From the IMG/VR virus record IMGVR_UViG_3300030329_006583, positions 203,119 to 267,118 of that record: a DNA stretch of 64,000 nt, one strand, 5' to 3'. The notes beneath the pieces were generated by a model that did not search any database, was not told the DNA's origin, and saw nothing but the letters and a program-made list of their open reading frames with translations. The position numbers and the translations under genes are program-made. Of this stretch, positions 2,442 to 55,100 are shown in pieces. Every line of letters begins with the position of its first letter. The first letter of the stretch is position 1.

Positions 2442-3463
2442 CCTTCAATCTCCGGTATACCTGTTATCCTGTGACCGGGTCGGACCCCATTCCTTTTAAA
2501 CCAACCGCGGTTCATCTCCAATGCGCATCGGGCAGGGCCATTCGAATAAGTATGTTCCTCCGTGAAGGGTTCCATGTCCTCAATGTTTAAAATATACCCA
2601 TCATCATCCGTATACGCAATAGACAAGGGGAGAGGTGTGTTCCTCATCCAGAAAGATCTTTGATTAGAATCTGGAAAAACAAACAGCATCCCGCTATCTT
2701 CCCCCATCCCGCGACGGAACATTAGGCCCTGTTGACGAGTGGCAGGGGTTGAAGCAATCTCAGTATCGACCTGTATGCCATTTACCATCACCCCCTCAGA
2801 CAATGTTGTAGTTGTTTTGGTTGCGTACCTGACCTCACCCTCATAGATGAACTCATCAACCTGATTAAACCCCAACCCCTGCGCTTCTCCCAATATCTCA
2901 ACTTCAGCCATGCACTCATTTCGAGCACCACCCACCAAATCAGCGCCATTCCACTTTGGTAATTCATCTTCTAAATCGGGAACCCAAAAACCATAGTCTT
3001 CAAGCTCGTCAAACAGAAGCTCGCTAACACCAATCGCTTCTACGTCTTCTTCTTCCAGCTCCTGGATATCTCGGATGTCTTTATCAATCATGTACTTAAC
3101 AATCTCTACAATCGATGATCGATCAAAACACACACTTGAATCCATCACGTCTCGAAAGAAACCGTAGCCCTTATCGAAGAAAGTTGATTTTGATAGCAAT
3201 TCATCGTATGTCTCTTCATCCCAATCCAACTTTTCAAAGTAAAAGTCTTTCAAGGCAGACTCTGATATCATACCGAGCGTGTCTTCACCGTTATAAAGAA
3301 ATAGCACACGGGAATAATTCTCTGCTGCCTCACGAAGCATATCACCGATATCAAAAGGAGTGTTGCTTTCGTACTCAGGCTGGATATCTACTACGACAAG
3401 ACTGCCTTTCGATCCCTGCTCTTGCTCTAGCAATACCCTTATGTATTCGCGGAGTAGTTTCAT
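2438..3463 (-). CDS. Tagged fusion: isochorismatase/cysteine-hydrolase-like domain plus C-terminal DUF192
   Basis: LVVVDIQPEY...VGGARNEC; EIASTPATRQQGLMFR...GMLFVF...FWMRNTPLPLSIAY...ALEMN. Confidence 0.7.
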   Translation of the reverse strand: MKLLREYIRVLLEQEQGSKGSLVVVDIQPEYESNTPFDIGDMLREAAENYSRVLFLYNGEDTLGMISESALKDFYFEKLDWDEETYDELLSKSTFFDKGYGFFRDVMDSSVCFDRSSIVEIVKYMIDKDIRDIQELEEEDVEAIGVSELLFDELEDYGFWVPDLEDELPKWNGADLVGGARNECMAEVEILGEAQGLGFNQVDEFIYEGEVRYATKTTTTLSEGVMVNGIQVDTEIASTPATRQQGLMFRRGMGEDSGMLFVFPDSNQRSFWMRNTPLPLSIAYTDDDGYILNIEDMEPFTEEHTYSNGPARCALEMNRGWFKRNGVRPGHRITGIPEIEG

Positions 3464-3903
3464 TTTTCTGGAACCCCCAATAGCTTTTCACATTCATCAG
3501 CCAAAATACTCAATTTTAGGGCGGTCAACCTGACATGTTCAATGAAACCCCTTTGGTGAAATGTTTTCCATGCCTGGTGATTATCTGATTTCATGCGGTC
3601 AAAAATCTTATCGATACCAAGGGCATTACACAAAGAAAAGGAAAACTGAAATGCTGCCTCGCTGTAATCTTCATCCCTAAGTGCCAACAGACCTTTCTCT
3701 GCCGATCTTTTTACTTCACCATATAAAAGTGATACACATTCTGGATTATTTTTAATTTCGCAGGTAAGATTAGGCGAACATGCCCTGTACTCTAGTTCTC
3801 CAAAATACTCGATGGTTACCTGCGTATTGCCTTCCAGGTAATTAGTTTTGGGAGTGCAGGAACAAAAAAGTAGCAACAGCGTTATTAGTAAAGCCCTTAT
3901 CAT
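3460..3903 (-). CDS. Putative lipoprotein
   Basis: Hydrophobic N-term followed by LFCSC lipobox-like sequence. Confidence 0.55.
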   Translation of the reverse strand: MIRALLITLLLLFCSCTPKTNYLEGNTQVTIEYFGELEYRACSPNLTCEIKNNPECVSLLYGEVKRSAEKGLLALRDEDYSEAAFQFSFSLCNALGIDKIFDRMKSDNHQAWKTFHQRGFIEHVRLTALKLSILADECEKLLGVPEK

Positions 3904-3930
3904 CTATTAATCCTCCCTGCCAGTGGGTTT

Positions 3931-4284
3931 TCACCATGGCCCGTGTTGACCCGTCTTCAAACAGTTAACCACCGTTTCCTCGGCAGTATATTCCCGTCGG
4001 ATTTCGGGCTGGAACATGTCATAATAAATATCACGTGGAATTCCTTCTGGCTTGGTATAACTTGACTGCCAGTCAAACACAGTGTCACCTTTCTCCACCC
4101 ACGCATGATCCACAGTTTCCCCAGAGAACTTATCAGTGACCTGCCCATGCACCACCTTAAACTTGGAAAGATCGCTGAATTCTTCATCTGTGGTACCCTG
4201 GGCCATCTTTATTGCGTGTGGATAGCATTGGCCGATTGCTTTTTCCACTAGTAAGGCTCTTATGTACTCACGCAATAGATTCAC
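3931..4284 (-). CDS. Tagged protein, possible transglutaminase/papain-like Cys-His-Glu fold
   Basis: GQCYPHA...VVHG...HAWVE; N-term MNLLREYIRALLVE. Confidence 0.55.
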   Translation of the reverse strand: MNLLREYIRALLVEKAIGQCYPHAIKMAQGTTDEEFSDLSKFKVVHGQVTDKFSGETVDHAWVEKGDTVFDWQSSYTKPEGIPRDIYYDMFQPEIRREYTAEETVVNCLKTGQHGPW

Positions 4285-4889
4285 TTTATCACCCCGGCCG
4301 AAGCAAAATCTACAATGTTAATCCCCAGCCCTTCGGTTTCTTCAGACACAACAGACATCAAGTTATCCGGAACCATTATCTCCTTAATTGACCAATTGTC
4401 AACCAAGGCTTCGTTAGCAGAACCAGGAATAAAATCTTTGGAATCAAGAACAAGAAAACCGGGTGACAACAACTCATCCATGTCATGATAGGTACCTTTG
4501 TTTACCCCAGAAGACTGTGCCCTATGTTCTCCTCCTACCCTAGCCGCCGTGGACCCATATCCCGTATTTAGATCCTCATTTGATAATAGGGTTATCCTTC
4601 CATCGATAACCAACCCGACCATAGAAAGCTCATAGCTTTCTGGGTTTATCTGCCCTGGCAAATAAGCTCGAACACTCAATTCATTTCTGGAACCTACGTT
4701 AATTGTTTGCATTAATTTTTGTGGCCTAACCCAATGAACTGTTACTAGCGAGTCAAGAAACTGTTGGTCAGCATTCTTTGCGTAATACTGCTTTATTTCC
4801 CGACCGGTTTTTAGAGCTAACAAATCACGCTCATCTGCTTCGGCAGTTTCGACCAACAATTCCCTTATATATTCACGTAGTAATTTCAT
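4281..4889 (-). CDS. Tagged hypothetical protein
   Basis: N-term MKLLREYIRELLVE. Confidence 0.75.
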   Translation of the reverse strand: MKLLREYIRELLVETAEADERDLLALKTGREIKQYYAKNADQQFLDSLVTVHWVRPQKLMQTINVGSRNELSVRAYLPGQINPESYELSMVGLVIDGRITLLSNEDLNTGYGSTAARVGGEHRAQSSGVNKGTYHDMDELLSPGFLVLDSKDFIPGSANEALVDNWSIKEIMVPDNLMSVVSEETEGLGINIVDFASAGVIK

Positions 4890-5173
4890 TTCTTGCCCCT
4901 GATCTTAACCCATGTGCCCCACATTAACGGAACAGCTAACCAATGCAAGCATAATAACCATGCTGCAGGAGCACCGGCATAAAAAGATGGATGAACTGTC
5001 TTTCCCAAGAATATGAAGAGAGCGGGAAACCCAACGTCTTCAATAATTTCCCACAACAAGAATATGACAACGAATGCCAGACCGTTCTCTTTGAGAAAGC
5101 CTTTTAATTTCTCAATAGAAAAATGCTCAAATTTATGAACTAGGCGATCTTTTGTCCACTGAAATAACTTCAT
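4886..5173 (-). CDS. Small membrane protein
   Basis: Two hydrophobic segments. Confidence 0.65.
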   Translation of the reverse strand: MKLFQWTKDRLVHKFEHFSIEKLKGFLKENGLAFVVIFLLWEIIEDVGFPALFIFLGKTVHPSFYAGAPAAWLLCLHWLAVPLMWGTWVKIRGKK

Positions 5174-6021
5174 TAATAATATTTTGCCCCCATAACATTA
5201 ACATCAGGATACTGCTTTTCCATCTTTTCTTTCAGATGGCCTATCGCGGGGGTCATCATCTTCCCAAAGTCAATAATGCTAGCAGGCTTTGCATACATGC
5301 TGAAAAACTTGTCAACAAGCCGGGTCGCTACTTTTTGGCCACCTTTATCTCCCCGGGTTTTCATATAATCAATATACCAGTAATCCGGCCCTCGTTGGTG
5401 ATAATCTAAAAACCCGATGATGCAAACGTCGCTCACCCCTGGGATTATCTCATCTAGCACTGGTTTTTTAAGTTTTCTTCTGCCACCCTTTGTACGTTTT
5501 CGCCACCTTTCAATTTCTGCGAAATAGTGATCATGAGGCCTCGGGGGATCTGTGACAGAAGAATCACATAAGGCCAAACGTTTCACATTGCCAGAACTGT
5601 GATATTGGAGCGGAGAATCAACTTCACGGAACTCAATTCCCTCTGTCAAAATTCCCCTGACAACTTGACGTACAGACTCTTTCGCATGGGGTGTATCGTT
5701 AATCGTTTTAAGCTTGGCCATGTCAACACCAGAAATGCCGGTCAGATCAGCAATCAGATCATCTATGGTATAACCATCACCTCGCTCAAACCGAACCACC
5801 AGATCGGCCATCTGCTTTCCTTCAGGTGCAGGACGAAGCGAAGCATCCTGGCGCACCGTTATCACATCCGGCAGTCCCCGAATCTTTGTGAGAATGTGTT
5901 CCATGGTAGGCTTATCAGGAGAATCAATGCTGACTCGCACTGTTACGGAGAGATCATCTAACACTGGTTCAGCAGCCGTTTGTTCCAATAAGCCCCTTAT
6001 GTACTCGCGTAGTAGTTTCAT
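5173..6021 (-). CDS. Tagged two-domain protein: ACT-like domain plus GNAT acetyltransferase-like domain
   Basis: ILTKIRGLPDVITVR; WYIDYMKTRGDKGGQKVATRLV (acetyl-CoA motif A-like); tag at N-term and between domains. Confidence 0.6.
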   Translation of the reverse strand: MKLLREYIRGLLEQTAAEPVLDDLSVTVRVSIDSPDKPTMEHILTKIRGLPDVITVRQDASLRPAPEGKQMADLVVRFERGDGYTIDDLIADLTGISGVDMAKLKTINDTPHAKESVRQVVRGILTEGIEFREVDSPLQYHSSGNVKRLALCDSSVTDPPRPHDHYFAEIERWRKRTKGGRRKLKKPVLDEIIPGVSDVCIIGFLDYHQRGPDYWYIDYMKTRGDKGGQKVATRLVDKFFSMYAKPASIIDFGKMMTPAIGHLKEKMEKQYPDVNVMGAKYY

Positions 6022-7113: not shown

Positions 7114-7449
7114 TTACGCAGAAAAAGACGTTCCACACCCACATGTGGAAGTAGCATTGGGGTTACTAAATTCAAACCCGCTTCCGTTCAGCCCACCTGA
7201 CCAATCCAGAACGGTGCCAATCAAAAATAAGTAGCTCTTTTTGTCTACATATAACTTAATTCCGCTCTCAGACGTGTATACCTTATCACCTTCTTGAATC
7301 TCAGTTTCCAATTCCAAGTTATAAGACAAACCTGCACAACCCCCACCTTGTACACCCACCCTTATTCCGTTAGCAGTAGAATTTTCACGTTCCATGATCT
7401 TACGAATCTGTGTTTCTGCATCCGGTGTTATCTCAATGGTTGGTTTCAT
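7114..7449 (-). CDS. iscA: A-type Fe-S carrier protein (IscA/HesB)
   Basis: GVQGGGCAGLSY...NPNATSTCGCGTSF. Confidence 0.95.
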   Translation of the reverse strand: MKPTIEITPDAETQIRKIMERENSTANGIRVGVQGGGCAGLSYNLELETEIQEGDKVYTSESGIKLYVDKKSYLFLIGTVLDWSGGLNGSGFEFSNPNATSTCGCGTSFSA

Positions 7450-7822
7450 TCTTTTCTCTCCAATCTTTGATTGCAGCCTTGATGGCATCCTCCGCCAACA
7501 CGGAACAATGAATCTTGATGGGTGGCAAATTCAATTCCTCGACAATCTCCACGTTTCTTATCTTTTCGGCATTGTCAACTGTCATTCCCTTTACCCACTC
7601 GGTCGCCAGTGAACTAGCGGCAATCGCACTCCCACAACCAAAAGTCTTGAATTTGGCATCTTCAACAATGCCTTCATCATTTACCTTGATTTGCAATTTC
7701 ATAACATCACCACATTCAGGAGCACCGACCAAACCGGTGCCCACTGTAGTGTCTGTTTTATCCATTGATCCAACGTTCCTGGGATTTTTGTAATGTTCAA
7801 GCACTTTATCTGAGTATGCCAT
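7433..7822 (-). CDS. iscU: Fe-S scaffold protein IscU
   Basis: YSDKVLEHYKNPRNVG, GAPECGD, FKTFGCGSAIA, LPPIKIHCS. Confidence 0.97.
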   Translation of the reverse strand: MAYSDKVLEHYKNPRNVGSMDKTDTTVGTGLVGAPECGDVMKLQIKVNDEGIVEDAKFKTFGCGSAIAASSLATEWVKGMTVDNAEKIRNVEIVEELNLPPIKIHCSVLAEDAIKAAIKDWREKNETNH

Positions 7823-7824
7823 TT

Positions 7825-8184
7825 TTAGCTCTTGAGTTTTCTACCTGGTCTTGTTGCATGCTCATGTGTTTTTGATGCTGCCGCTTCAACCATTCTGGCG
7901 GGCACGTTCTTGAGCGTTTTCTTGCCGAACACAATATCATAATGGCCAATGGCACCGTTCCTGTCAAGACTATGCCACACAATTTTACCCACCCTTTTAG
8001 CCGGGATCCCATATGCCTCCTGCAAAGCTGAAGACTTCAGCTTACCATGTGTCAGTCACGTGTGCCCGATCAATTCTTCCTCTTCGGGATCCAACTCCGC
8101 TTGTTCCATACCTGACCCGAATGGTGCAGCTTTCTTCAATTCTTCTTTAATAATTTGCCTAAGTTGTCTCTTCGTAATTTTCAT
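7825..8184 (-). CDS. Tagged 119-aa His-rich protein with in-frame UGA at codon 43; candidate selenoprotein
   Basis: MKITKRQLRQIIKEE...LIGHT-TGA-LTHGKLKSSALQEAYG... is in frame with the track ORF 7825..8025; hairpin follows the UGA. Confidence 0.7.
8025..8043 (-). promoter_or_regulatory. SECIS-like stem-loop AAGCUGAA-GUC-UUCAGCUU, 12 nt after the UGA (8056-8058)
   Basis: Perfect 8-bp inverted repeat; apical GU at +24/+25 counting the U of UGA as +1. Confidence 0.6.
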
Positions 8185-8525
8185 AACTTATATTTTCTCC
8201 ATGCATATGCAGGGCGATATTTTAAATAATGTTCATCATATTGGTTGGTGTATGCCTCTCGTTCAAATCTTATGGATTTATATGCATCAATAAAATTTTT
8301 ATATTTCCATAGTGATATTATAAAATCAAAAAGATATATCAAATAAAAACCAACGATGGCAGTCTCAAATTGTTGACGAATATGGATCATTTCATGTCGT
8401 AATATTGTTTTATTACCTTCCCCTCTCACAAAGATAAATGGAAAAAGTGCAATTGCTTCGACATTAAATGCCCAACTAAATAGGCGCGGAATGCGACTGT
8501 GTTTAAAAATAAATGGTATCACCAT
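8181..8525 (-). CDS. Small zinc-metallopeptidase-like protein
   Basis: ILRHEMIHIRQQ (HExxH) and FEREAY. Confidence 0.7.
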   Translation of the reverse strand: MVIPFIFKHSRIPRLFSWAFNVEAIALFPFIFVRGEGNKTILRHEMIHIRQQFETAIVGFYLIYLFDFIISLWKYKNFIDAYKSIRFEREAYTNQYDEHYLKYRPAYAWRKYKL

Positions 8526-9640: not shown

Positions 9641-9718
9641 TGGTGGGCCCTCTGGGATTCGAACCCAGAACTGACGGTTTATGAGACCGGCGCTCTAACC
9701 TGATTGAGCTAAGGGCCC
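9641..9718 (-). tRNA. tRNA with CAU anticodon, most likely tRNA-Ile2 (lysidine substrate)
   Basis: GGGCCCTTAGCTCAATCAGGTTAGAGCG-CCGGT-CTCATAA-ACCG...GGTTCGAATCC...AGGGCCCACCA; C4:G69 and C5:G68 pairs; encoded CCA; adjacent to tilS. Confidence 0.9.
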
Positions 9719-9729
9719 GCATTACAAAT

Positions 9730-10359
9730 CTAAACAGCAACTGCCTCTTTTATAAAAAAAACAGAATTTTCTTCCATTATTTTTTTTGCCAATACCTTCC
9801 GCATACCCGGATTAACATGTAATGCGTGGGGCATCATATTGTGTCGAATAAAATTTCTCATGTATCGCGTATCATCATTGGACACATCTTCCACATAAGG
9901 AACCCCTTTACGATCACACCAAGCATGCAACACACTCTTCGGGGTGGTCAAAAAAGGGCGAATAACATTTTGATTAGAATAAGGGGTGAGTGCCGGTTTG
10001 CCATGAAGGGATGAAAACAACCACCATTCACACACATCATCCAGGTGATGGGCTGTTACCACAGGGGTTTTCAACCCATGCAAAAATGCATATCTTTCAT
10101 CCCGCCAATATTCTTCCCAGCTTTGCGATCCCACCTTCTTCATGGAAGTAGATCCTGTAATCAGCTTGAGGTTATGCGATTCACAATAATCTTGTACAAA
10201 ACTTTGGGCGTAGCCAGAATGGGGGGTATTATGATTAAAATAGGCCACTTCAATTTCACGGCCGCCGCGGCGGAGAAAATCCAGTGCCGCCATCGAATCC
10301 ACCCCGCCTGAACAGGCCATTACGATCTTTTTAGGTACCTGGTTTAACAGCCTAATCAT
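9730..10359 (-). CDS. tilS: tRNA(Ile)-lysidine synthase, catalytic domain only (209 aa)
   Basis: SGGVDS PP-loop, RY, TAHHLDD, IRPFL, DVSNDDTRYMRNFIRH. Confidence 0.9.
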   Translation of the reverse strand: MIRLLNQVPKKIVMACSGGVDSMAALDFLRRGGREIEVAYFNHNTPHSGYAQSFVQDYCESHNLKLITGSTSMKKVGSQSWEEYWRDERYAFLHGLKTPVVTAHHLDDVCEWWLFSSLHGKPALTPYSNQNVIRPFLTTPKSVLHAWCDRKGVPYVEDVSNDDTRYMRNFIRHNMMPHALHVNPGMRKVLAKKIMEENSVFFIKEAVAV

Positions 10360-14724: not shown

Positions 14725-16194
14725 TTATTCCGATCTTCTCTTAAACTCTTTCATTAATTTTTCCGCCTGCTCCTCATATTCTGCGAGATTTGCCCAAGAT
14801 TTATCAGGGGAAAGCATACTTTCATCAATTCCATTAAATTTTACCGGAATTTTCAAACCTGTATAAGGATGAAGTTGATAATCTGCTTTTTTTAATGTTC
14901 CATCATGAATACCGGCTATTATCTTTCGAGTTACATCGATGGGCATACGATGGCCTATCCCATACCCGCCACCGGTCCACCCTGTATTAACAAGCCAACA
15001 ATCTACTTTATGCTTCTCAATTTTTCCCTTTAATAAGTGTGCATATTCCTGAGGAAACCGGGGCATAAATGGTGCGCCGTAACAATAGGAAAAAGTTGCC
15101 TCCGGTTCTTTCACCCCTGCCTCGGTGCCAGCCACCTTGGCCGTATACCCCAGAAGAAAGTGTTGTACAGCTTCCTCGGGAGTAAGCTTGGAAACCGGGG
15201 GTAGAATCCCAAAGGCATCACATGTTAACATTACAACATTGGCTGGATGTCCAGCGGCACCAGTTTTACTGGAATTACTAATATATTCAATTGGGTAAGA
15301 TGCACGTGTGTTCTCTGTGAGTGTTGCATCATTAAAATCTGGGGTTCTATCATCATGAAGGATAACGTTCTCTAGAATGGCACCGTGCCTTTGGCAGGCA
15401 TTCCAGATTTGTGGTTCAGCTTTCGCGTCAAGCCGAATCACCTTGGCATAACAACCGCCTTCAAAATTATAAAGACCTGTGTCCGACCAAGAGTGTTCAT
15501 CATCCCCAATCAATACCCGATCTTCCTCCGACGAAAGTGTTGTCTTACCTGTCCCAGACAGTCCAAAAAATATTGCCGGAGCCCCTCCATCCTCTGCGGT
15601 GTTCACAGAACAATGCATGGGCAGAATTCCTTTTGCCGGCAGAAGAAAATTCAGAACAGTGAATACGCTTTTCTTAATTTCCCCGGCATAATAAGTACCG
15701 CTAATCAATATTTCTTGTTCTTGAAATGAAATGAGAACCATAGGATCTGAGGTAAAGGTCGGTGCGGCATAAATCGTCCATTCATCTTCTTGCCCTGTTA
15801 ACATGTGTTCAATCAATTCGGGCCTAACAAACATATTCCTTGCAAATATACTGTGCCACAATAATGTTGTATTGACTTTAAGCCTCAAAGTGTTTGCAGG
15901 ATCACGATTGGCGTAAAGCGTTTGTGTATATATTCCGGTTTCCCCCGCTTTTGCAAGGTGCTCTTTCATCCTATCACGGGTATACAGAAATTCGTGATGG
16001 GTAATACTTTGATTGGCATCCCAATTAATTTTTCCTTGCGTAATGGAATCACACACAATAGATTTTGCCTTAGGTGAACGACCCGTGCAATCGCCGGTAG
16101 CGGTGACCAAGGCACCACCCCCAGATTCATTAGCTTCCCCCAATTGGAGGGACATCCGTGTTAATTCTTTTAATGAAAATTCATCTAATAACAT
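14725..16194 (-). CDS. pckA: ATP-dependent PEP carboxykinase
   Basis: TGRSPK, YAGEIKK, MHCS, FFGLSGTGKTTLS, IGDDEH, NFEGGCYAK. Confidence 0.95.
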   Translation of the reverse strand: MLLDEFSLKELTRMSLQLGEANESGGGALVTATGDCTGRSPKAKSIVCDSITQGKINWDANQSITHHEFLYTRDRMKEHLAKAGETGIYTQTLYANRDPANTLRLKVNTTLLWHSIFARNMFVRPELIEHMLTGQEDEWTIYAAPTFTSDPMVLISFQEQEILISGTYYAGEIKKSVFTVLNFLLPAKGILPMHCSVNTAEDGGAPAIFFGLSGTGKTTLSSEEDRVLIGDDEHSWSDTGLYNFEGGCYAKVIRLDAKAEPQIWNACQRHGAILENVILHDDRTPDFNDATLTENTRASYPIEYISNSSKTGAAGHPANVVMLTCDAFGILPPVSKLTPEEAVQHFLLGYTAKVAGTEAGVKEPEATFSYCYGAPFMPRFPQEYAHLLKGKIEKHKVDCWLVNTGWTGGGYGIGHRMPIDVTRKIIAGIHDGTLKKADYQLHPYTGLKIPVKFNGIDESMLSPDKSWANLAEYEEQAEKLMKEFKRRSE

Positions 16195-18174: not shown

Positions 18175-18378
18175 TTATTTTATCATTCCTAACTTTCGTA
18201 AATAGTCTCTTATTTTATTACGATACTTTTCTTCCATTCCGGGTTGGTCTAACATGAGATTATTTTCATCAGCCTGTTCATAAGGGGAACTTAATTCATG
18301 ACGTACCGATTCCCTGACAAAACGGCGTAAATGTTTCATTTTTAATCGTATTTTTTTATTCGGCACAGGCATTCTCAT
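18175..18378 (-). CDS. Small tagged protein
   Basis: LKMKHLRRFVRESV. Confidence 0.6.
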   Translation of the reverse strand: MRMPVPNKKIRLKMKHLRRFVRESVRHELSSPYEQADENNLMLDQPGMEEKYRNKIRDYLRKLGMIK

Positions 18379-20497
18379 CCAAAATTTCTAGAAGATTTTC
18401 ATACATGGTGGCCGCAGATTGTGTTAATTCATACCACTTACCACCAAACTGTGTTAAAGGTTCCCACCCTGTCAATTCACCATTCCACTTTTGGGCATTT
18501 TTTAATGTTTCCGGAGTGAAGGTATAAATTTTAAGATCAACTGTACCCTGAATGGTTTGCAGTATCTCTGATTGAGTTAACCCATATCCCATGTTAACAC
18601 CGCCCAAATCCTTGTACAAATAACTTTGTCCCTCTTCGTCTGTAAAAACAATAACTACCCTTTTTGCATCATCTCGCCAATTAATGATAAATTGATCAAG
18701 CGGAGGCTGAGAATCCACGGTTTGCATGGTGCTGTTCCATGTCAAAGACGATAAAGGCCACGGTAATGAAGCAGCGGAACACAAATTATGAATTGCTAAG
18801 TAAACAGCATCATACAACATTTCCACACCACCGTTCAAAGAATTGGGATCAAGCACCGACAATTGTGCCATAAATTGTGAAAATTCTGTAAGTGGACTGA
18901 TCAACTGAAGATATTCAATTGGGCTCCACGCGCCTTGTTGCGGTGGCACCGTTGGCCCAACCACTAACCCCCATTTAATTACTTCTTCATCGCTATAATT
19001 TGTAGCAAACATGTTTAGTGCGGTCATGACAGCTTCAATCTCAATATTCATTGAACCAGACCAATCGATAATAAAAAGAATATCGGTATCCTCCATTTCC
19101 TTTCCATCATCTATAATGCCGTCACAATTATCATCAGTGCCATTACATGCATCCTGATCTGCCGGCACAACCTCATCTAAACAGAGGTTTGGTACAAAAA
19201 GTTCCTCCCCCGCCTCAGTCGTATAATTATTGCCCCACTCACCTTGATGACATATGAGATGACCCGGTTCACATATTCCCACAAACAATGTCTCAGGAGG
19301 ACCGGTATAACAGGCTTCTATAAGATCTTCATCAACCAATTGATTGCAATTATCGTCGTGATTATTGCACATTTCATCTTCAACAAACCCCTTAAACGGA
19401 TCACAATTTGGGGCCGGGGGTTTTTCCCAATAACATTGGGCGTAACACTGGGTCTGTATTATTTCCACACAATCTTCATCTACACATTCACATGTTTTAT
19501 ACCCACCCCCGCATTCTAAGGGTGATTCAAAACACGGAAAAAGAACGCCAACAAGATCAATCGTACATAAACAATCCAAGCCTTCATCAATCAATCCATC
19601 ACAATTATCATCAAACCCATTGCAAATTTCTTCAAAAGGTTGTTTGGCGGAACACCCAATCCAGTTACCATTGACACAAAATTCCAGACCATCCCCACAT
19701 ACAGTGGAACAAGGTTGTATGAGATCTTCATCAATCAGCCCATCGCAGTCATCATCAAATCCATTACAAACATCTTCTGGCACCGGACCACATTGACCAC
19801 ATACGTTAAGTTGATCTTCATCCACTAAACCGTCGCAGTCGTTGTCTTTGTAATCACAAATTTCCTCTTCCGGATCAGGCCCTATGCAGATTTCCATGCC
19901 ATCAACACAAATCAAGTCACCTAACCCACACGGAGTTTCACAAGGAACAATTAAAATATCTTCATCAATTTCCCCATCACAATCATTGTCTAGGTTGTCA
20001 CATATTTCATCAAAACATGGATTACAATCTGAATATTTCCAAACCCCTTTTTCACACCACTTCTGCTGGCTCCCTTGTTGATCATCCACCAAACACTCAA
20101 TAATTTCCACAGTATCATTTGAAGGATCACATTCTAATTTTTCCTCGCAAGGACCTAACTCAATAATTTGAGGAGGATCCTTACAAATATCTGTAACCAA
20201 TTTAAATTGCCATACTGCGTCTAAAGGTGGGCAGAAATACCATTCCTCCTGATAACAATCTTGCATATATTGAAACTCTAAATTAGGTATAGTTGCAGAA
20301 TTAGCCAAGGGGGGTAAATCCTTTATCTTTTCAGCAATTTCTTCAAATGTATATACAGGAGTTTCATCACCAGTATCATTCACAAATTCACCATAACCGG
20401 GGGATTTATCTGAGCAGGCGACAAAAAATAAAAGAATCAGCAATAAGCATAATGTGCTAACAAGAAAGGTTATAATTGAATTGAAGATATGTTCCAT
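18356..20497 (-). CDS. Lipoprotein with Cys/Asp-rich MopE-like metal-binding repeats and C-terminal vWA domain
   Basis: FVAC lipobox; six ExCxxxDxxCDGxxDE repeats; DILFIIDWSGS MIDAS, VIVFTDE. Confidence 0.85.
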   Translation of the reverse strand: MEHIFNSIITFLVSTLCLLLILLFFVACSDKSPGYGEFVNDTGDETPVYTFEEIAEKIKDLPPLANSATIPNLEFQYMQDCYQEEWYFCPPLDAVWQFKLVTDICKDPPQIIELGPCEEKLECDPSNDTVEIIECLVDDQQGSQQKWCEKGVWKYSDCNPCFDEICDNLDNDCDGEIDEDILIVPCETPCGLGDLICVDGMEICIGPDPEEEICDYKDNDCDGLVDEDQLNVCGQCGPVPEDVCNGFDDDCDGLIDEDLIQPCSTVCGDGLEFCVNGNWIGCSAKQPFEEICNGFDDNCDGLIDEGLDCLCTIDLVGVLFPCFESPLECGGGYKTCECVDEDCVEIIQTQCYAQCYWEKPPAPNCDPFKGFVEDEMCNNHDDNCNQLVDEDLIEACYTGPPETLFVGICEPGHLICHQGEWGNNYTTEAGEELFVPNLCLDEVVPADQDACNGTDDNCDGIIDDGKEMEDTDILFIIDWSGSMNIEIEAVMTALNMFATNYSDEEVIKWGLVVGPTVPPQQGAWSPIEYLQLISPLTEFSQFMAQLSVLDPNSLNGGVEMLYDAVYLAIHNLCSAASLPWPLSSLTWNSTMQTVDSQPPLDQFIINWRDDAKRVVIVFTDEEGQSYLYKDLGGVNMGYGLTQSEILQTIQGTVDLKIYTFTPETLKNAQKWNGELTGWEPLTQFGGKWYELTQSAATMYENLLEILDENACAE
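19106..20008 (-). repeat. Six intragenic ExCN/DxxDD(D/N)CDGxIDE repeats
   Basis: EICDNLDNDCDGEIDE, EICDYKDNDCDGLVDE, DVCNGFDDDCDGLIDE, EICNGFDDNCDGLIDE, EMCNNHDDNCNQLVDE, DACNGTDDNCDGIIDD. Confidence 0.85.
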
Positions 20498-22911: not shown

Positions 22912-24807
22912 TTAAACATCAGTAATTTCTGGCTCAGGGGAACCCGGGTTTGGATCCGTGGGATTAACGTCTTCCGGACTGACGGGGGCTGATGCCGCCA
23001 TTTTTTCATAAGCAATTTTTGCCACATTCTGAACACATGCATTTAACGCATTATAAGCATCATCAACCTCTTGGCGTGTTTCAGATGTTAAAGCGCTTTT
23101 GGCACTTTCAGCGGCAGTTACCAACGCCTCAATATCAGCTTCATCCAAACTTTCCGCCATGTTTTCCTTCATTTTAAAAGCCTGGTGAACTAGGGAATCT
23201 AATTTATTTCTAGATTCAATCATCTCACGTTTTTTCTGATCTTCAGCTTCGTATTTGGTGGCCTCCTTGATTTTTTCTTCAATCTCCTCGGGGTTTAGGC
23301 CCGTAGAATCTGTAATAACAATACTTTGATCCTTACCGGTGGCCTTGTCGCTGGCAGACACTGTCAAAATACCATTAGCATCAATATCAAAGGTTACTTC
23401 AATTTGTGGTACACCTCTCGGTGCAGGTGGAATTCCATCCAATGTAAATTTGCCCAGTGTACGATTATCACCCGCCATCTGCCTTTCACCCTGAAGTACA
23501 TGTACCTCGACTGTTGATTGACCATCTGCTGCGGTAGAAAATATTTCCTGCTTTTTAGCCGGAATTGTAGTATTACGCTCAATGAGCCGAGTACACACAC
23601 CGCCCATCGTTTCAATCCCCAAAGATAAAGGGGTAACATCCAACAACAGGATGTCTTTTACATCCCCACTCAGCACGCCTCCCTGAACCGCGGCGCCCAA
23701 AGCAACTACCTCATCCGGATTAACACCTTGTGACGGAGACTTTCCAAAAAATTCCTCCACCTTTTTAACCACCAAGGGAATCCGTGTAGAACCACCAACC
23801 AACAAAATCTGATCAATATCTGTTGATTTCTTACCGGCGTCCTTAAGTGCCTGCTTACAAGATTTAAAAGTCTTATCAATCACGCCCTCAATCAATTGTT
23901 CGAATTTAGAACGCGTCAAATTCATCACCAAGTGTTTGGGCCCATTAGCGTCAGCAGTCAAAAATGGCAAATTAATATCAGCTGTCATAGCCGAGCTTAA
24001 TTCCACCTTTGCCTTTTCGGCAGTTTCACGAATACGTTGCAAAGCCATTTTATCCTCTGCAACATCTACCCCTGTTTCCTTCTTAAATTCCGCAATCATA
24101 TAATCAATGAGAGCCTCATCAACGTTATCACCGCCTAGGTATGTATCCCCTGAAGTTGACAGTACTTCCACGACATCTCCGGAAACATCCAAAACTGACA
24201 CATCAAAAGTACCACCACCAAAATCATAAACCACTACCACTTGTTCTGTATTGGTGCCGAGACCATAAGCCAAAGCAGCGGCAGTGGGTTCATTAATAAT
24301 TCTCTTGACATCTAGGCCCGCAATCGTACCTGCATCCTTGGTCGCCTGTCGTTGGGAATCATTAAAATAGGCAGGAACTGTAATTACGGCTTCTGTAATT
24401 TTCTCCCCCAGGTAATTCTCAGCAGATCGCTTTAATTTTTGTAGCACTTTGGCTGAAATTTCTGGTGGTGTGAACGCCTTGTCTCCCACGGTGATGTTAA
24501 CGCCACCCTTCTTACCTGCACTAACATTATACGCAACCTTGCCGGCAACGTCTGATACTTCATTGAATTTAGATCCAATGAATCTTTTCGCAGAATAAAT
24601 CGTCTGTTCCGGTTTGACAACAGCTTGTCGGCGTGCGGTGACACCAACCAAAATATCGTCATCATTAAAAGATACCACAGAAGGTGTTGTGCGAGAACCT
24701 TCCTCGTTCACCATCACAACAGGTTGTTCTCCTTCCATAACCGCCACGCAGCTGTTAGTAGTCCCCAAATCAATACCAATAATTTTACCCATGATCTCTT
24801 CCTCCAT
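22912..24807 (-). CDS. dnaK: Hsp70 chaperone
   Basis: [32 protein letters not shown]. Confidence 0.97.
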
Positions 24808-27695: not shown

Positions 27696-29306
27696 TTATG
27701 TTAAAATTTCTTCATCATCCACAATGGCACAACCCACAGAAAGTAACATCCTCGCAACTGATGATGCATTTTCCAAGGCTGTTCTCACAACCTTTACGGG
27801 ATCAATGATTCCTGTTTCAAACATATTTACCCACTCCCCGGTGGCCGCATTATATCCACTATTATAACTTGTTTTTATTGCCTTTTGCACGACAATTTCT
27901 GAACTTCCTCCAGAATTATCTACAATTTGTTTAAGCGGGGCGCAACATGCTTTGGAAACAATGTCAATGCCTACTTTAAAATCCTCTGATTCCTTAACAG
28001 ATTTGCGATTTTTTTTCAAACTGGATGATGCACGAACTAACGCCATACCACCCCCTGATACCACGCCTTCTTCGGAGGCAGCCTGGGTGGCGTGTAACGC
28101 ATCTTCTACGCGATCTTTTCTCTCCAGCAATTCTACCTCGGTAGGTGCACCCACACGAAGAACAGCAACCCCACCTGCCAAGCGTTGAATTCTTCTCGCC
28201 AAAGCCTCTCTTTCACCCGGGTCAAGGGTCATATCCTCTAAAATAGATTTTACCTCACACAATGCCTGTTTCCGAGATTCTTCACTGCCCCCTACGCCCA
28301 CAAACACAGTGCGATGTTTATAACACAAAACCTTCTTACATTTTCCTAAATCATTTAATTCGATTTTCTGTAATGACTCAGGATCAGCTGTCACCACTGG
28401 CTCACAATCCAACATTACCCCCATATCACGTATAGCAGCAACTCGAGATTCACCAAATTCCGGAGCTCGAATAGCACATACATTCAAAGTACCTTTCATT
28501 CGATTTAAAACCAGGCCTTGCAATGCCTCCCCATCCACATCATCTGCCACAATGAGTAGAGAACGCTGTTGGCGACTTACTTTTTCTAATATAGGCAGAA
28601 TCTCCTGTAAGGATGTAAGTTTCTTATTGATAAGCAAAACGGCGGGATTTTCCAAAACTGCTGCCATTTTATCCTGATCAGTCACAAAATAAGGGGAAAG
28701 AAAACCGCGATCTAATTCTAAACCCTCCACCACATCCAAGCTAGTTTGAAACCCCTTGGCTTCCTCCACAGTAATAATACCATCTTTCCCAACCTGTTTC
28801 ATGGCCGAAGCGATTAATTCACCAATGGAATCCTCTCCATTTGCTGAGATTGTACCTACCTGCGCAATTTCTTCCATGCTGGTAATGGGATTTGCCATTT
28901 CATGCAATTCACTAATAACATACTTTACCCCATATTCCATTCCCTTTTGAAGCTCTGCCGAAGAATAACCTGCAGCTAGCATCTTTAAACCTTCGGAAAA
29001 CATAGTCTGGGCAAGGACGGTAGCAGTTGTGGTACCATCCCCGGCAACATCCGCAGTGCGAGAAGAAGCTTCCTTCACCATCTGCACCCCTAAATTCCTA
29101 AACTTATCACGCAAATTAATGGATTTAGCAACTGTTACCCCATCCTTGGTCAAATGCGGCATCATTCCGGGGCGTTCAATAATAACATTCTGCCCTTTTG
29201 GCCCCATGGTAACCTTAACAGCATTGGCCAAAATATTGACCCCGTCAACCAATTCTGACCGGGCTGTTTCATCAAATTTTAAAGTTTTAAATTCTGTATC
29301 GTGCAT
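27696..29306 (-). CDS. groEL: Chaperonin GroEL (no GGM tail)
   Basis: TMGPKG, TKDGVTVAK, GDGTTTATVLA, GIIDPVKVVR. Confidence 0.95.
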   Translation of the reverse strand: MHDTEFKTLKFDETARSELVDGVNILANAVKVTMGPKGQNVIIERPGMMPHLTKDGVTVAKSINLRDKFRNLGVQMVKEASSRTADVAGDGTTTATVLAQTMFSEGLKMLAAGYSSAELQKGMEYGVKYVISELHEMANPITSMEEIAQVGTISANGEDSIGELIASAMKQVGKDGIITVEEAKGFQTSLDVVEGLELDRGFLSPYFVTDQDKMAAVLENPAVLLINKKLTSLQEILPILEKVSRQQRSLLIVADDVDGEALQGLVLNRMKGTLNVCAIRAPEFGESRVAAIRDMGVMLDCEPVVTADPESLQKIELNDLGKCKKVLCYKHRTVFVGVGGSEESRKQALCEVKSILEDMTLDPGEREALARRIQRLAGGVAVLRVGAPTEVELLERKDRVEDALHATQAASEEGVVSGGGMALVRASSSLKKNRKSVKESEDFKVGIDIVSKACCAPLKQIVDNSGGSSEIVVQKAIKTSYNSGYNAATGEWVNMFETGIIDPVKVVRTALENASSVARMLLSVGCAIVDDEEILT

Positions 29307-52155: not shown

Positions 52156-55100
52156 TTAAGTTAACAGTTGTTTAAATTTACCAAAATTAGTAGACATTCC
52201 AAATTCATTTTGATTGATCTCAGCAACACAAATTGAATAAGCCGGAACATCTGTTTTGCCATCCCAACCCCACATAAACATTTTTGAAACTTTCCCTGAT
52301 GATCCTGTAATCTCAAGCAAAAGATAGGGTCGTTTGTTTTTTGTCAATTTAGAATGTGCAGCCTTTACAACAAACCAATATAAATCTTTGCCGTGATATT
52401 CATCAATTGCTGCAATTTCTTTTTCAGCAAATTTTTGTTTAATTTGTTCCGGAATTAAAAGACTGGCGTCAAAACTACCAAGCAAAGAAGTACTCATCTC
52501 AGCCCTTTCCTTGGCACCCCATTCATCACACCTTTCTTCTTCCAGTATGGCCTGACGATAATTGTTAATCCCACGTTCAGGATCACTTTTTGTTCGCTTT
52601 CTTAAATCATTATAGTGATCAATCAAAACATGATGCATATGCTTATAACTGGAAAATTCTTTGTTATCTCCTACCACATCCATGGATTCAAAAGCGCCAA
52701 TTTTAATTAAATTTTCCAATGCGCGTTTATTAAATTTTGAATGCCTCCAAATTCCTTCTTCATCCCACAACATTTCCCTTATGTTTCGATAAGGTCTTTT
52801 TTCAACAATTTCATCAATTGCAGAAGATCCCACGCCTTTACAAGAAAGAAATGAAGGCATAAACTTCTTGCCGTCAAGGATAGTCCAACTATCTGTGGCA
52901 TAATTAACGTCAATAGGGATAATATCATATCCCAACGCCCTAACCTCTGAAAATGCTTTGGCACGCTTATCAGCATTTGATGACATGGATTCCAGGTATG
53001 CACAAAGCCATTCCTCTTCATAATACGTCATCAGCCATGCACAAAAATATGAATCCATTGCATAAGAAACAGCGTGACTCATATTAAAACCATACCCGGC
53101 AAAATAAAGAATCTTTTCGTAAAGATCACTAGCAACTGAATTTGGTACCCCGTTTTTAACGGCGCCTTCAACAAAACTGCTTTTTAATTCATTAGCCTTT
53201 TTAATTGCCGCTGCACCACCGGAGATGCTGCGTTTCATGATAGCCTTTCTGACTTTATCGCATTCATCCTTGGGAAAACCTGCGACTACATTAGCTAATT
53301 TCATTACCTGTTCTTGAAAAATAATCATCCCATACGTAGGCTCTAAAACCTCCTTAATCAACGGATGTTGGTAATCAATATTCTCAGGTTCCAGCTTGTT
53401 TTTAATGTATAATTTATGAACATTGGCCGCCAGAGGCCCTGGGCGATAAATAGAGGTAAGAGTAGCAATATCAATTAAATTACGAGGCTTTGCCTTCATA
53501 AATAGTCGCTGGGCACCCCTATTTGTTAATTGAAAGATTCCGCCCCACCTACCGGAATGATATACATACTCATACACCTGTGGGTCATCAAAATCTATCA
53601 CACTTGGTGCCATGTTTTCTTCGTACCATTTTCTTACATCTGCAAATGCCGGTTTATCTACACCGCAGTGCCTCTGCAAAATCAATTCAATGGCACGTTC
53701 TACAATGCGAAGTGTTTCCAAACCCAGGAGATCAAATTTAATCCAACCAAATTCTTCCAGGTGTTTAAAATTTGTACCTTCCACCCACGGCGTTTGGGTT
53801 TCACCTTTGGCCAAAATAAGAGGCATTCTTTGGGGAACATTCTCTGAAACAATAACCCCGCCTGCATGACGACCTAGCGCCTTGTTTTGCTTAAACAATA
53901 CTCCCATGGGATTAGCCACTTCCGGGTATTTATCAATGAATTTTTTAAATGATTCACTGTGTTTAATTGCATCTTCGTATTTTAACACAAAAAGATTCTT
54001 GTCTTCACCGTGTTTGGTAACAGCTTTACGAACATCCTGTTCCACCGTCCGGGTGGCTGCATTGGCTTCATCAAAAGGAATCCCATAAAATCTCGATATA
54101 TCTTTCACCAACGTCTTTAATTTAAATGTGTTATAATTGGAAATTGGAACAATGTTCTCACCCCCAAAATTATCTTTAAGCAAATCAATAAGCAAATCCC
54201 GATTGGAAATATCTGTGTCAATATCAGGATATTCTAAACGATACTTGCTCAAAAAACGTTCAAAAAGAAGGTTGTATTTAATAGGATCGACGTCGGTGAT
54301 ATAAAGAACATAATTAACCAGTGAACCCGCACCGGAACCGCGGCCTGGACCGATTAACATCCGATCTCGAGCAACATCCAAAATTGCTTTCATCGTTAAA
54401 AAGTAGGCACTAAATTTGCGTTCTTTAATAACCGCCAGTTCCATTTTTAACCGATCGATATATTCTGGCTCATCAGCTAACCCACGTTTTATGAGTCCCT
54501 CTTTACACGCCTCCAATAATGCTTTATCGGCAGTCAAACCCTCGGGAATAACATAAGAAGGCAATTTAGGACTTTGATCGGGGTGAATGTCCCCAATTTC
54601 TTCATACACAATATCATGAGTACGTTCAATTGCCCCATGAATTATGTTATCATCATAAAAATCATACTGTTTAGTTGTGTCTTGATAGGATTCCCAAACC
54701 TGATTGGCGTTTTTGGGATAAAGTTCACACTTTAAATCCTCTTTGGACTGAGGGAGTTTGGAAGGATCAAAATCACGATAATTAAGCCAGCCCAATTTTT
54801 TATAAAGTTCCCGCTCCTTCCAATGTTCAGGACGGGCATAATGAGAATCTGTGGTTACAACGAGCTGTTCCTGCAAACCGGCATTGTCTGCAAATTTCAT
54901 AATGGCCCTATTGACCAGGTGCTGTGCCGGTAATTGGTTGAATTGAAGCTCTAGTTTAACATTCCCACGACCCACTGAATGTTCCAGTTGTTCATAAGCA
55001 TTCCCTACCCCCAATAATACCTTTTCAAACAAATTCTTATCATCCAACAAACTGGCATGTAAATTATCAAATTCTACTTCCTGTAGGTGTTTAAAAACCT

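What the first reader, a model, noticed from the sequence alone, without database searches (positions are those of the whole stretch)
7825..8184. Hidden UGA-recoded gene with a SECIS-like hairpin: candidate phage-encoded, virion-tagged selenoprotein beside iscU/iscA
Seen: an ATG at 8184 opens MKITKRQLRQIIKEE...LIGHT and meets TGA (8058-8056) at codon 43. The same frame continues LTHGKLKSSALQEAYG...WHSL...HYDIVF...NVP...HEH to TAA at 7825, making a 119-aa protein. The downstream half has only a TTG start with no RBS. A perfect 8-bp stem (AAGCUGAA-GUC-UUCAGCUU) begins 12 nt after the UGA, with apical G/U at +24/+25. Established: the E. coli fdhF SECIS places its SelB-binding GU loop at +23/+24. 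Inference: UGA encodes Sec in an H-x-U-x-x-H site, completed by the WHS and HEH histidines as a metal/redox centre, using host SelB/tRNA-Sec. From memory, similar phage proteins have H-x-C-x-x-H here; this needs verification. TGA is an ordinary stop elsewhere in the window, so the recoding would be site-specific.
Basis: partly seen in the sequence, partly recalled or inferred. Interest (0 to 1): 0.92.

Follow-up and report, generated by a model that had tools for sequence, protein, structure and literature searches.

The report
Candidate selenoprotein family in marine phages
A small phage gene is interrupted by a UGA stop codon that is most likely read as selenocysteine, judged from more than 80 relatives, cysteine-containing homologues and a co-varying downstream RNA hairpin; I found no earlier report of a bacteriophage selenoprotein family.

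Summary
On the minus strand, ATG 8184 opens a frame that meets TGA at 8058-8056 and continues to TAA 7825. A perfect 8-bp hairpin starts 12 nt after the UGA. An independent Tara Oceans assembly carries the identical 360 nt. In all 80 related viral loci analysed (of 86 detected), the codon at this position is TGA, always preceded by His-x. Both flanks evolve as coding sequence. Every database homologue that shows Trp here, where checked, is a table-4 miscall of TGA. Real homologues without TGA have Cys (TGT) in one unbroken ORF, including five cyanophage records, and the two whose DNA was folded lack the hairpin. The hairpin keeps its register across subfamilies with different stem sequences (94.6% paired, 5 of 8 pairs compensatory). 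It fits the published bacterial SECIS model. TGA is an ordinary stop elsewhere (23 of 82 window genes, and some family genes themselves). Best reading: a phage-encoded Sec/Cys protein family with an H-x-U/C motif on a small His-rich beta-barrel domain, decoded by host SelB and tRNA-Sec (confidence about 0.7). The host, its Sec machinery, actual selenium incorporation and the protein's function are all unproven. The link to iscU/iscA is not conserved.

The parts
8059..8184 (-). N-terminal coding piece of 42 codons. It carries the MKITKRQLRQIIKEE leader and the PFGSGMEQ...LIGHT segment that ends in the conserved His-x before the UGA.
   Evidence: Protein-level conservation with saturated synonymous change in relatives. 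ATGA overlap with the upstream gene's stop.
8056..8058 (-). In-frame UGA, the proposed Sec codon (position 43 of a 119-residue product).
   Evidence: TGA in 80 of 80 related viral loci and in L002, L003 and L110-L113. TGT (Cys) at the aligned position in L102-L104, and Cys in the translated cyanophage homologues.
8044..8055 (-). 12-nt spacer (codons L-T-H-G) between the UGA and the hairpin. It is coding, and it includes the +3 His of H-x-U-x-x-H.
   Evidence: Spacer length is constant across the alignment of 56 sequences. Synonymous variation at the Thr and His codons.
8025..8043 (-). SECIS-like hairpin: 5' arm 8043-8036, loop GUC 8035-8033, 3' arm 8032-8025.
   Evidence: Covariation: 94.6% paired, 5 of 8 pairs with double changes, score 0.641 against 0.244 in shuffles. 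Synonymous sites are frozen here only (p = 7.8e-7). bSECIS constraints are met.
7828..8055 (-). C-terminal coding piece of 76 codons: a conserved His-rich small beta-barrel domain (WHSL, YDxxFG, NxP, HxH).
   Evidence: Profile search. AF2 model of a Cys homologue has pLDDT 84-96 over this domain. Weak PHROG hits phrog_22379 and phrog_11470.
7825..7827 (-). True stop codon (TAA) of the 119-residue read-through product.
8181..8525 (-). Upstream neighbour: a small HExxH protease-like gene whose TGA stop overlaps the start codon (ATGA). Context only, showing that TGA terminates translation 126 nt upstream of the recoded TGA.
   Evidence: phrog_15610 'protease', E = 5e-26. The gene recurs near family genes in eight other loci.

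Best explanation
One gene (8184-7825, minus strand) encodes a 119-residue protein whose codon 43, UGA, is redefined as selenocysteine.

Inferred mechanism: when the ribosome places UGA in the A site, the hairpin that begins 12 nt downstream sits just outside the mRNA entrance. There it acts as a bacterial SECIS: it binds the host's SelB carrying Sec-tRNA(Sec), which outcompetes RF2.

The Sec lies in a conserved H-x-U-x-x-H/E motif at the start of a small His-rich beta-barrel domain (invariant WH and HxH histidines). This is probably a metal-binding or redox site. Relatives in phages of hosts that lack the Sec trait, such as cyanophages, carry Cys there instead.

Shown here: UGA conservation, coding on both sides, the Sec/Cys pairing, a co-varying hairpin in a fixed register, and normal stop use of UGA elsewhere.

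Inferred: the role of SelB and tRNA-Sec, actual selenium incorporation, the metal or redox function, and any packaging role of the N-terminal leader.
For: 1. The codon is TGA in 80 of 80 related viral loci, with 56 distinct contexts, and is always preceded by a His codon plus one more codon. It is also TGA in L002, L003 and L110-L113.

2. Both flanks are coding in frame 0. Among six close relatives, 0 of 29 conserved degenerate codons away from the site are nucleotide-invariant. Next to the UGA and in the hairpin, 7 of 8 are invariant (Fisher p = 7.8e-7). In the subfamily whose N piece is only 11 codons, the Ser codon uses all four TCN forms.

3. Cys homologues exist as single ORFs. P0009, P0025, P0033 and P0049 read H-[SA]-C-A-[TN]-H. 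The codon is TGT in L102-L104, and the L102 and L103/L104 contexts show no hairpin at +12. Cys is also found in P-SSM7, MED4-213, WH25-B and two AG-345 viral records.

4. No Trp, Arg or other sense codon is present. All 'W' database proteins that were checked are TGA in the DNA.

5. The hairpin sits in the same alignment columns in all subfamilies but has different stem sequences: AAGCUGAA/UUCAGCUU, AGCGGAA/UUCUGCU, GGAGGAA/UUCCUCC, CGUCUG/CAGACC, CUUGGGG/UCCUAAG and AAGAUUCA/UGAAUCUU. Overall 94.6% of cells pair and 93 cells carry double changes. The covariation score is 0.641, against 0.244 +/- 0.018 in shuffles (0 of 500 reach it) and at most 0.256 when the 3' partner is slid.

6. The window hairpin fits the published bSECIS constraints (PMC13188914): loop 3 nt starting G-U, 8-bp stem, 20 nt from UGA to loop, MFE -7.5 kcal/mol. 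Family-wide, 39 of 60 sites pass, against 41 of 600 random window TGAs. Under stricter geometry the figures are 32 of 60 against 3 of 600.

7. UGA is a normal stop. It ends 23 of 82 window genes, often in ATGA overlaps. Family genes in L002, L029, L059 and L095 themselves end in TGA.

8. UGA has persisted across a deep radiation, and the tree needs only one Sec/Cys switch. That argues the codon supplies something no sense codon can.

9. An independent assembly is identical.
Against: - The host is unknown, so the presence of selA, selB, selC and selD cannot be checked.
- No tRNA-Sec or suppressor tRNA was found in the window, in about 30 kb further upstream, or in the flanks of the roughly 110 loci scanned.
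- No SelA, SelB or SelD domain was found among the window ORFs or the upstream genes.
- No relative was found in 185,579 species-representative genomes, so there is no host link.
- Rfam SECIS models give no hit, although they cover bacterial SECIS poorly.
- The hairpins are modest. The window hairpin is exactly at the -7.5 kcal/mol limit. 21 of 60 family hairpins fail the energy or geometry criteria, and 15 of those 21 are in the AU-rich 'HK-UGA-MKEG' subfamily.
- There is no bulged U as in E. coli fdhF (my own knowledge).
- No second selenoprotein candidate occurs in these phage regions.
- Very abundant marine hosts appear to lack the trait. Pelagibacter lacks selC according to preprint 10.64898/2026.04.03.716425. 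For cyanobacteria, Peng et al. list only an orphan SelD in some Prochlorococcus; that the phylum mostly lacks the trait is my own knowledge.
- There is no experimental evidence of any kind.
Confidence: 0.7

Rival explanations
1. SelB-independent programmed read-through. The hairpin, with or without the local context, promotes decoding of UGA by a near-cognate tRNA (Trp, or Cys). The result is mostly a 42-residue peptide plus a small, regulated amount of full-length protein. No selenium is involved.
For: The host Sec machinery is undemonstrated. No Sec genes or tRNA-Sec were found in about 94 kb of this phage. The window's UGA is followed by C, which from my own knowledge is a weak termination context in E. 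coli. The conserved hairpin could in principle stimulate read-through.
Against: The base after UGA is not conserved across subfamilies: C, A, U or G. A 12-nt spacer puts the hairpin outside the ribosome, like a SECIS. Stimulators of read-through and frameshifting usually sit about 5-9 nt downstream, at the entrance helicase (my own knowledge). If Trp or Cys were the product, a single change to TGG or TGY would be expected often over so deep a tree. There is no TGG at all, and one Sec/Cys switch explains all the data. The aligned Cys in a His-rich motif makes Trp an implausible functional residue.
Confidence: 0.15
2. Two separate polypeptides. Translation stops at UGA. The downstream domain is made on its own by re-initiation or coupling. 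In the largest subfamily an ATG follows the TGA directly. The hairpin would regulate this coupling or mRNA stability.
For: In the 'HK-UGA-MKEG' subfamily the codon after TGA is usually ATG, and GTG in one case. Gene callers split the gene.
Against: In other subfamilies the next codon is CTG, CTA, CTT, GCG, TTY or ATA, none of which is a usual start. The window's only downstream start, TTG, is not conserved. The His two codons before the UGA is invariant, and the motif H-x-[U/C]-x-x-H spans the stop. Cys homologues are single continuous ORFs. Only TGA, never TAA or TAG, occupies the site in 80 of 80 loci. A plain stop-start junction would not require that.
Confidence: 0.08
3. Artefact or decay: a sequencing or assembly error, a pseudogene, or a genome that reads TGA as a sense codon throughout (table 4 or 25, or phage late-gene recoding with a suppressor tRNA).
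For: Some database entries translate the site as W. On its face that suggests table 4.
Against: An independent assembly has the identical sequence. More than 80 contigs from many metagenomes carry TGA at this position. TGA ends 23 of 82 window genes, and the window is 92% coding on one strand with table 11. No suppressor tRNA was found. Purifying selection acts on both flanks. The W entries fail to translate from their own DNA under table 11.
Confidence: 0.02

Closest known systems
Bacterial selenoprotein genes with an intragenic SECIS (archetype: E. coli fdhF; also Moorella fdhA)
   Same: An in-frame UGA is followed, after about 11-12 nt, by a short hairpin whose apical loop starts with G-U (window GUC; one subfamily GGUCU). 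The hairpin lies inside the coding sequence. Cys-containing homologues exist. UGA is otherwise a stop. The hairpin meets the four constraints of the consensus bSECIS model.
   Different: The gene is carried by phages, not cells. The protein family has no known function. There is no bulged U in the stem, and the loop is 3 nt rather than the GGUC tetraloop of fdhF (fdhF details from my own knowledge). The hairpins are weaker (about -7.5 kcal/mol). Dependence on SelB is untested.
Cyanophage 'T4-like GC 715' proteins annotated 'possible cytitidyltransferase' (P-SSM7 PSSM7_192, MED4-213 CPMG_00178, P-HM1, WH25-B; phrog_22379)
   Same: They share the C-terminal His-rich domain and the H-x-C motif at the aligned position. 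They are the best match in the viral structure library, E3SNV6 with E = 1.4e-3.
   Different: They have Cys, not UGA. There is no hairpin requirement. They are often parts of longer proteins. W of WHSL is replaced (MHDL/QHTL). Similarity is weak, 41-44% identity over about 40 residues. The 'cytidyltransferase' name was not reproduced: Pfam gave no hit on either piece of the window gene.
Selenoproteins of eukaryotic viruses (the glutathione-peroxidase homologues of molluscum contagiosum virus and fowlpox virus; from my own knowledge)
   Same: A virus carries a UGA-Sec gene and relies wholly on the host's Sec machinery.
   Different: Those are captured host GPx genes with a eukaryotic 3'-UTR SECIS. 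This is a phage-specific family with a bacterial-type intragenic hairpin.
Other stop-codon redefinition in phages: Q-beta A1 read-through of UGA, and genome-wide TAG/TGA reassignment in Lak and crAss-like phages (from my own knowledge)
   Same: A stop codon is decoded as sense in a phage gene.
   Different: Q-beta read-through needs no conserved hairpin and inserts Trp. Recoded phages show many in-frame stops and carry suppressor tRNAs. Here one site per about 64 kb is affected, it has a dedicated structure, and no suppressor tRNA is present.

Membership tests
Bacterial selenoprotein gene (Sec-UGA plus bSECIS) | The in-frame UGA is conserved among homologues, with protein-level conservation on both sides. 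| tested here: met
   80 of 80 viral loci, plus L002, L003 and L110-L113. Synonymous-site test.
Bacterial selenoprotein gene (Sec-UGA plus bSECIS) | Homologues carry Cys at the position aligned with the UGA. | tested here: met
   P0009, P0025, P0033 and P0049. TGT in L102-L104. Five cyanophage or viral records with H-x-C. No other residue was seen.
Bacterial selenoprotein gene (Sec-UGA plus bSECIS) | Consensus bSECIS geometry: 3-9 nt loop, 4-16 bp upper stem, G in the first two loop positions, 16-37 nt from UGA to loop, MFE <= -7.5 kcal/mol (PMC13188914). | tested here: met
   Window: loop GUC, 8 bp, 20 nt, -7.5 kcal/mol, which is borderline. Family: 39 of 60 pass against 41 of 600 random TGAs. 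The 21 failures include 15 from the AU-rich subfamily, on energy.
Bacterial selenoprotein gene (Sec-UGA plus bSECIS) | The RNA structure is conserved by compensatory change. | tested here: met
   94.6% paired, 5 of 8 pairs with changes on both sides, 0 of 500 shuffles reach the score, slid controls are much lower. Caveat: the number of independent events is far smaller than the number of cells.
Bacterial selenoprotein gene (Sec-UGA plus bSECIS) | Sec machinery (selA, selB, selC, selD) is available in the translating cell. | not testable with these tools
   The host is unknown. The machinery was not found in the window, in about 30 kb upstream, or in locus flanks. No relative occurs in cellular genomes.
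Bacterial selenoprotein gene (Sec-UGA plus bSECIS) | Selenium is actually incorporated at the UGA (75Se labelling or mass spectrometry). | not testable with these tools
   Experimental.
E. coli-type SECIS (fdhF/fdnG) | Bulged U in the upper stem, a GGUC loop with G23/U24, and an 11-nt spacer (my own knowledge). | tested here: not met
   The stem is perfect with no bulge. The loop is GUC with G24/U25. The spacer is 12 nt. One subfamily has the GGUCU loop. So this is SECIS-like but not the E. coli subtype.
Rfam SECIS families | A covariance-model hit. | tested here: not met
   No hit at gathering threshold in the window, and none at E <= 10 in five short loci. These models represent bacterial SECIS poorly.
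Genome-wide stop-codon reassignment (table 4/25, recoded phages) | TGA is not used as a stop, there are many in-frame TGAs, and a suppressor tRNA is present. | tested here: not met
   TGA ends 23 of 82 genes. There is one in-frame site per window. No suppressor tRNA was found.
Cyanophage GC 715 / phrog_22379 domain family | Shared C-terminal His-rich domain with an H-x-C/U motif. | tested here: met
   Support is weak but consistent: phrog_22379 E = 3.5e-4, tblastn E = 1e-4 to 7e-3, Foldseek top hit, motif alignment.
T4-type capsid-targeting leader cleaved by the prohead protease | An N-terminal leader ending in (L/I)-x-E, and presence of the mature protein in virions. | not tested
   The leader MKITKRQLRQIIKEE contains I-K-E, and similar leaders open at least 9 window ORFs. 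No proteomic or protease evidence is available, and some subfamilies lack the leader.

The most novel reading that the evidence does not exclude
The UGA-plus-hairpin module works without the selenocysteine machinery. It would be a conserved, phage-borne, hairpin-dependent signal that redefines UGA in hosts lacking selABCD, for example through a near-cognate tRNA or an unknown factor. That would be a new class of bacterial recoding element, used to set the dose of a His/Cys-site protein or to make its synthesis conditional.
Probability: 0.12. Interest if true: 0.9.

Novelty: new variant of a known kind. Interest (0 to 1): 0.82.

Why it matters
Selenocysteine recoding is known in cells and in a few animal poxviruses. 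My literature searches found no bacteriophage selenoprotein. A 2026 review of the prokaryotic selenoproteome does not mention phages or viruses at all.

If the reading is right, several things follow:
- A widespread, diverse family of marine phage genes has been systematically mis-annotated. It is split in two, or translated with Trp under table 4.
- Some phages make their proteome depend on host selenium status and the host's SelB.
- The Sec or Cys state of this gene becomes a marker of whether a phage's host can decode Sec, which is useful for host prediction.
- The different loop types would give a natural panel of SECIS variants matched to uncultured hosts.
- A new His-rich Sec/Cys domain is flagged, and its chemistry is worth solving.

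Tried and rejected
- Pfam on both pieces gave nothing. PHROGs gave only weak hits.
- tblastn of three other subfamilies against 50,697 GenBank phage records found no match. Cultured phages therefore carry only the distant Cys form.
- blastn of flanking DNA against phages was uninformative for host. The DnaE-like polymerase has only relatives at or below about 31% identity.
- Two scans of species-representative genomes found no relative, so they gave no host clue. A third attempt failed because the alignment was too diverse.
- Rfam gave no SECIS hit.
- Foldseek against PDB found nothing significant: best E = 0.48, SH3/Tudor-like small barrels. A PDB sequence profile search found nothing. The fold therefore gives no function.
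- I searched the supplements of the GOS selenoproteome paper for the family's motifs and found none. It does not appear to be one of their GOS_A-C families, though only the text held could be searched.
- I looked for a second selenoprotein gene in the window and in all fetched loci. There is none.
- I walked about 30 kb upstream of the window on identical Tara contigs. There was no Sec machinery and no tRNA-Sec. The remaining 170 kb or more was not examined.
- The iscU/iscA functional link is rejected: the neighbours differ in L023-L025.
- Trp homologues are rejected: all were TGA.
- T4 gene-60-type bypassing or frameshifting is rejected because codons directly after the UGA are conserved in frame 0.
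- The metagenome-contig scan was not used because the viral collection already gave enough relatives.
- The 3-D clustering of the His and Cys residues could not be measured because model coordinates are not exposed.

Full report
**1. The observation**

The minus strand reads ATG (8184), 42 codons, TGA (8058-8056), then 76 more codons in the same frame to TAA (7827-7825). The 19-nt perfect hairpin AAGCUGAA-GUC-UUCAGCUU occupies 8043-8025 and starts 12 nt after the UGA. It is present in the MFE and centroid folds. The 91-nt region is not unusually stable as a whole (z = 0.38).

The start codon overlaps the TGA stop of the upstream gene (ATGA). The only start codon in the downstream half is a TTG inside the hairpin's 3' arm.

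The window is the last 64 kb of a 267-kb IMG/VR contig. An independent Logan assembly of a Tara Oceans run carries the identical 360 nt, TGA included. This is therefore not a sequencing or assembly error.

**2. Close relatives**

A protein search with the downstream piece found two relatives. One of them (P0003) shows 'W' at the site. Its own DNA has TGA, and the entry does not translate under table 11.

An exact-match scan for the hairpin, followed by a profile-guided scan of viral contigs, brought in more. Eighty loci encode the downstream domain. In all 80 the in-frame stop just before it is TGA, never TAA or TAG. There are 56 distinct sequence contexts, always preceded by a His codon and one further codon. 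Three more 'W' proteins from a search of 1.84 billion representatives are likewise TGA in their DNA.

Among six close relatives, synonymous sites are saturated. None of 29 conserved degenerate codons away from the site is nucleotide-invariant. In contrast, 7 of 8 are invariant in the codon after the UGA and in the hairpin (p = 7.8e-7). So both flanks are translated in frame 0, and an RNA-level constraint sits on top of the coding constraint exactly at the UGA and hairpin.

**3. Cys homologues**

The same representative search returned full-length proteins with Cys at the aligned position: H-S-C-A-T-H, H-S-C-A-N-H and H-A-C-A-N-H. Their DNA shows TGT inside one continuous ORF on 68-98 kb viral contigs, with only 3 of 8 hairpin positions able to pair.

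Cultured cyanophages carry a more distant Cys form, H-D-C or H-S-C. These are P-SSM7, MED4-213 and WH25-B, plus two single-virus AG-345 records.

No homologue has any other residue. A maximum-likelihood tree of 73 domains needs only one Sec/Cys switch (support 89/86). The domain is short, so the tree is only a rough guide.

**4. The hairpin**

In a 56-sequence alignment the hairpin occupies the same columns in every subfamily, but the stems differ and so do the peptides they encode (KLKSSAL, KRKDSAL, KL-SSAL, TWGSPKRK). Overall 94.6% of cells pair. Five of eight pairs change on both sides, covering 93 cells. The covariation score is 0.641, against 0.244 +/- 0.018 in shuffles (0 of 500) and at most 0.256 when the 3' partner is slid. 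Further variants with the same 12-nt spacer appeared later: AAGAUUCA-GGA-UGAAUCUU and AGUGGAA-GUU-UUCCGCU.

The loop's first base is G in the subfamilies with 3-nt loops. It is the second base in the AGUU-loop subfamily. One subfamily has GGUCU, the loop type I remember from E. coli and Moorella formate dehydrogenase SECIS elements.

I applied the four constraints of the consensus bacterial SECIS model as quoted in a 2026 review. The window hairpin passes, with energy borderline at -7.5 kcal/mol. Across the family 39 of 60 distinct sites pass, against 41 of 600 random TGAs. With tighter geometry the figures are 32 of 60 against 3 of 600. Of the 21 failures, 15 are the weaker, AU-rich hairpins of one subfamily.

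**5. UGA elsewhere**

The window is 92% coding on the minus strand under table 11. TGA ends 23 of 82 genes, many in ATGA overlaps. Several family genes end in TGA themselves. Genome-wide reassignment is therefore excluded.

No tRNA-Sec or suppressor tRNA occurs in the window, in about 30 kb upstream, or in the flanks of the roughly 110 loci scanned. No SelA, SelB or SelD domain was found. The phage, as far as it was examined, must rely on its host.

**6. What it most likely is**

All the standard computational criteria for a bacterial selenoprotein gene are met:
- a conserved in-frame UGA;
- conservation on both sides;
- Cys homologues;
- a SECIS-like structure at the right distance.

The 12-nt spacer matches the roughly 11 nt needed in E. 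coli for the hairpin to present SelB at the ribosome's mRNA entrance (my own knowledge). It is longer than the spacing typical of read-through or frameshift stimulators.

UGA has persisted through a deep radiation without a single TGG. This argues that it encodes something a sense codon cannot supply. I put Sec insertion by host SelB and tRNA-Sec at about 0.7. SelB-independent read-through gets about 0.15, two separate polypeptides about 0.08, and artefact or reassignment about 0.02.

The main weakness is the unknown host. No relative was found in cellular genomes or in cultured phages, apart from the Cys forms. Pelagibacter is reported to lack selC.

**7. The protein**

Invariant or nearly invariant residues are:
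- the His two positions before U/C;
- His (or Glu in one subfamily) three positions after it;
- the His of WHSL;
- the H-x-H near the C-terminus.

An AlphaFold model of a Cys form is confident over this domain (pLDDT 84-96). It predicts a short helix followed by a small beta-barrel. No significant match exists in PDB. The best viral match is the cyanophage Cys form.

A metal-binding or redox site is a reasonable inference and no more. Some Cys forms carry a second Cys four residues before the WH histidine, which the Sec forms lack.

**8. Side claims**

IscU (7433-7822) and IscA (7114-7488) are real, but the adjacency is not conserved in the nearest relatives.

The N-terminal leader is real and recurs on at least nine window ORFs. 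Its I-x-E ending resembles T4 prohead-protease sites (my own knowledge). Packaging is untested, and two subfamilies lack the leader.

**9. Novelty**

Five full-text searches found no report of a phage-encoded selenoprotein. Three papers on bacterial or marine selenoproteomes were also checked for phage, virus or viral mentions: the 2008 GOS survey, a 2016 comparative-genomics paper and a 2026 review. None reports one. One paper notes predicted tRNA-Sec genes in huge phages without naming any target gene.

The mechanism would be the known bacterial one. The carrier (phages), the protein family, and its breadth of several deep subfamilies across ocean viromes are new.

Noticed in passing
window 726, 3463, 4284, 4889, 6021, 8184, 35478, 42725, 44897 (minus-strand start positions): At least nine ORFs open with the same amphipathic leader, either MKITKxQLRxIIxE or MKLLREYIRxLLxE. 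Four of them (MKLLREYIR type, starts 3463-6021) lie in a tandem run. The leader may be a shared targeting or processing signal such as a capsid-targeting sequence.
   Followed up: partly
window 9641-9718 (tRNA, anticodon CAT) next to 9730-10359 (PP-loop ATPase, TilS-like): A tRNA that ARAGORN calls Met (CAU) sits immediately beside a TilS-like lysidine-synthase gene. It may really be tRNA-Ile2, the TilS substrate. The same tRNA lies upstream of the family gene in L010 as well.
   Followed up: no
window 11000-64000, minus strand: The phage has an unusually rich set of host-like genes. They include isocitrate lyase (61232-62476) plus malate synthase (62463-63992), which together make a full glyoxylate shunt. 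Others are PEP carboxykinase (14725-16194), DnaK (22912-24807), DnaJ, GroEL (27696-29306), a sigma-70 factor, peptide deformylase, Fe/Mn superoxide dismutase, ThyX and ThyA together, thymidine kinase, dCMP deaminase, Fpg, UvdE and a DnaE-type polymerase (52156-55758).
   Followed up: partly
window 8181-8525 (minus): A small, hydrophobic HExxH protein (phrog_15610 'protease') lies directly upstream. Homologues lie within a few kb of the family gene in eight other loci, beside both Sec and Cys forms. This may be synteny or a functional pairing.
   Followed up: partly
database proteins P0003, P0004, P0005, P0017, P0018, P0068, P0098, P0101, P0103, P0107-P0109: Public protein collections hold this family with Trp at the UGA. 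The cause is metagenome gene callers choosing table 4 on short contigs. Every entry checked has TGA in its DNA. Elsewhere the gene is split, or only the downstream 66 residues are called.
   Followed up: yes
L064 2851-2935 (just upstream of the 11-codon N piece): An 85-nt stretch is 78-84% identical to intergenic or hypothetical regions of cyanophages P-TIM68, SynMITS9220M01 and S-SCSM2R. It may be a conserved promoter or RNA element.
   Followed up: no
L061, L063, L064, L069, L074, L078 (C-terminal extension of the family protein): In one subfamily the protein continues into a ...YPSAYANAWAAKQYKAAGGGW... module. At the DNA level this module also matches a hypothetical gene of Synechococcus phage S-BM3.
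   Followed up: no
window 18356-20497 (minus): A 713-residue protein carries repeated MopE-type putative copper-binding motifs (PF11617, E = 7.5e-13). No PHROG family matches it.
   Followed up: no
L119 18296-19207 (about 8 kb upstream of window position 1 on the same phage): A PALP-family (cysteine-synthase-like, PLP-dependent) gene lies about 8 kb beyond the window's start. About 10 kb further on are a GH25 lysozyme with a PG_binding_1 domain, an FKBP, and tRNA-Leu, tRNA-His and tRNA-Gln genes.
   Followed up: no
L023 646-1296: An AhpC/TSA-type peroxiredoxin gene lies about 1 kb upstream of the family gene's start in one close relative (its in-frame UGA is about 1.7 kb away). It is an intact ORF with no in-frame TGA.
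   Followed up: no
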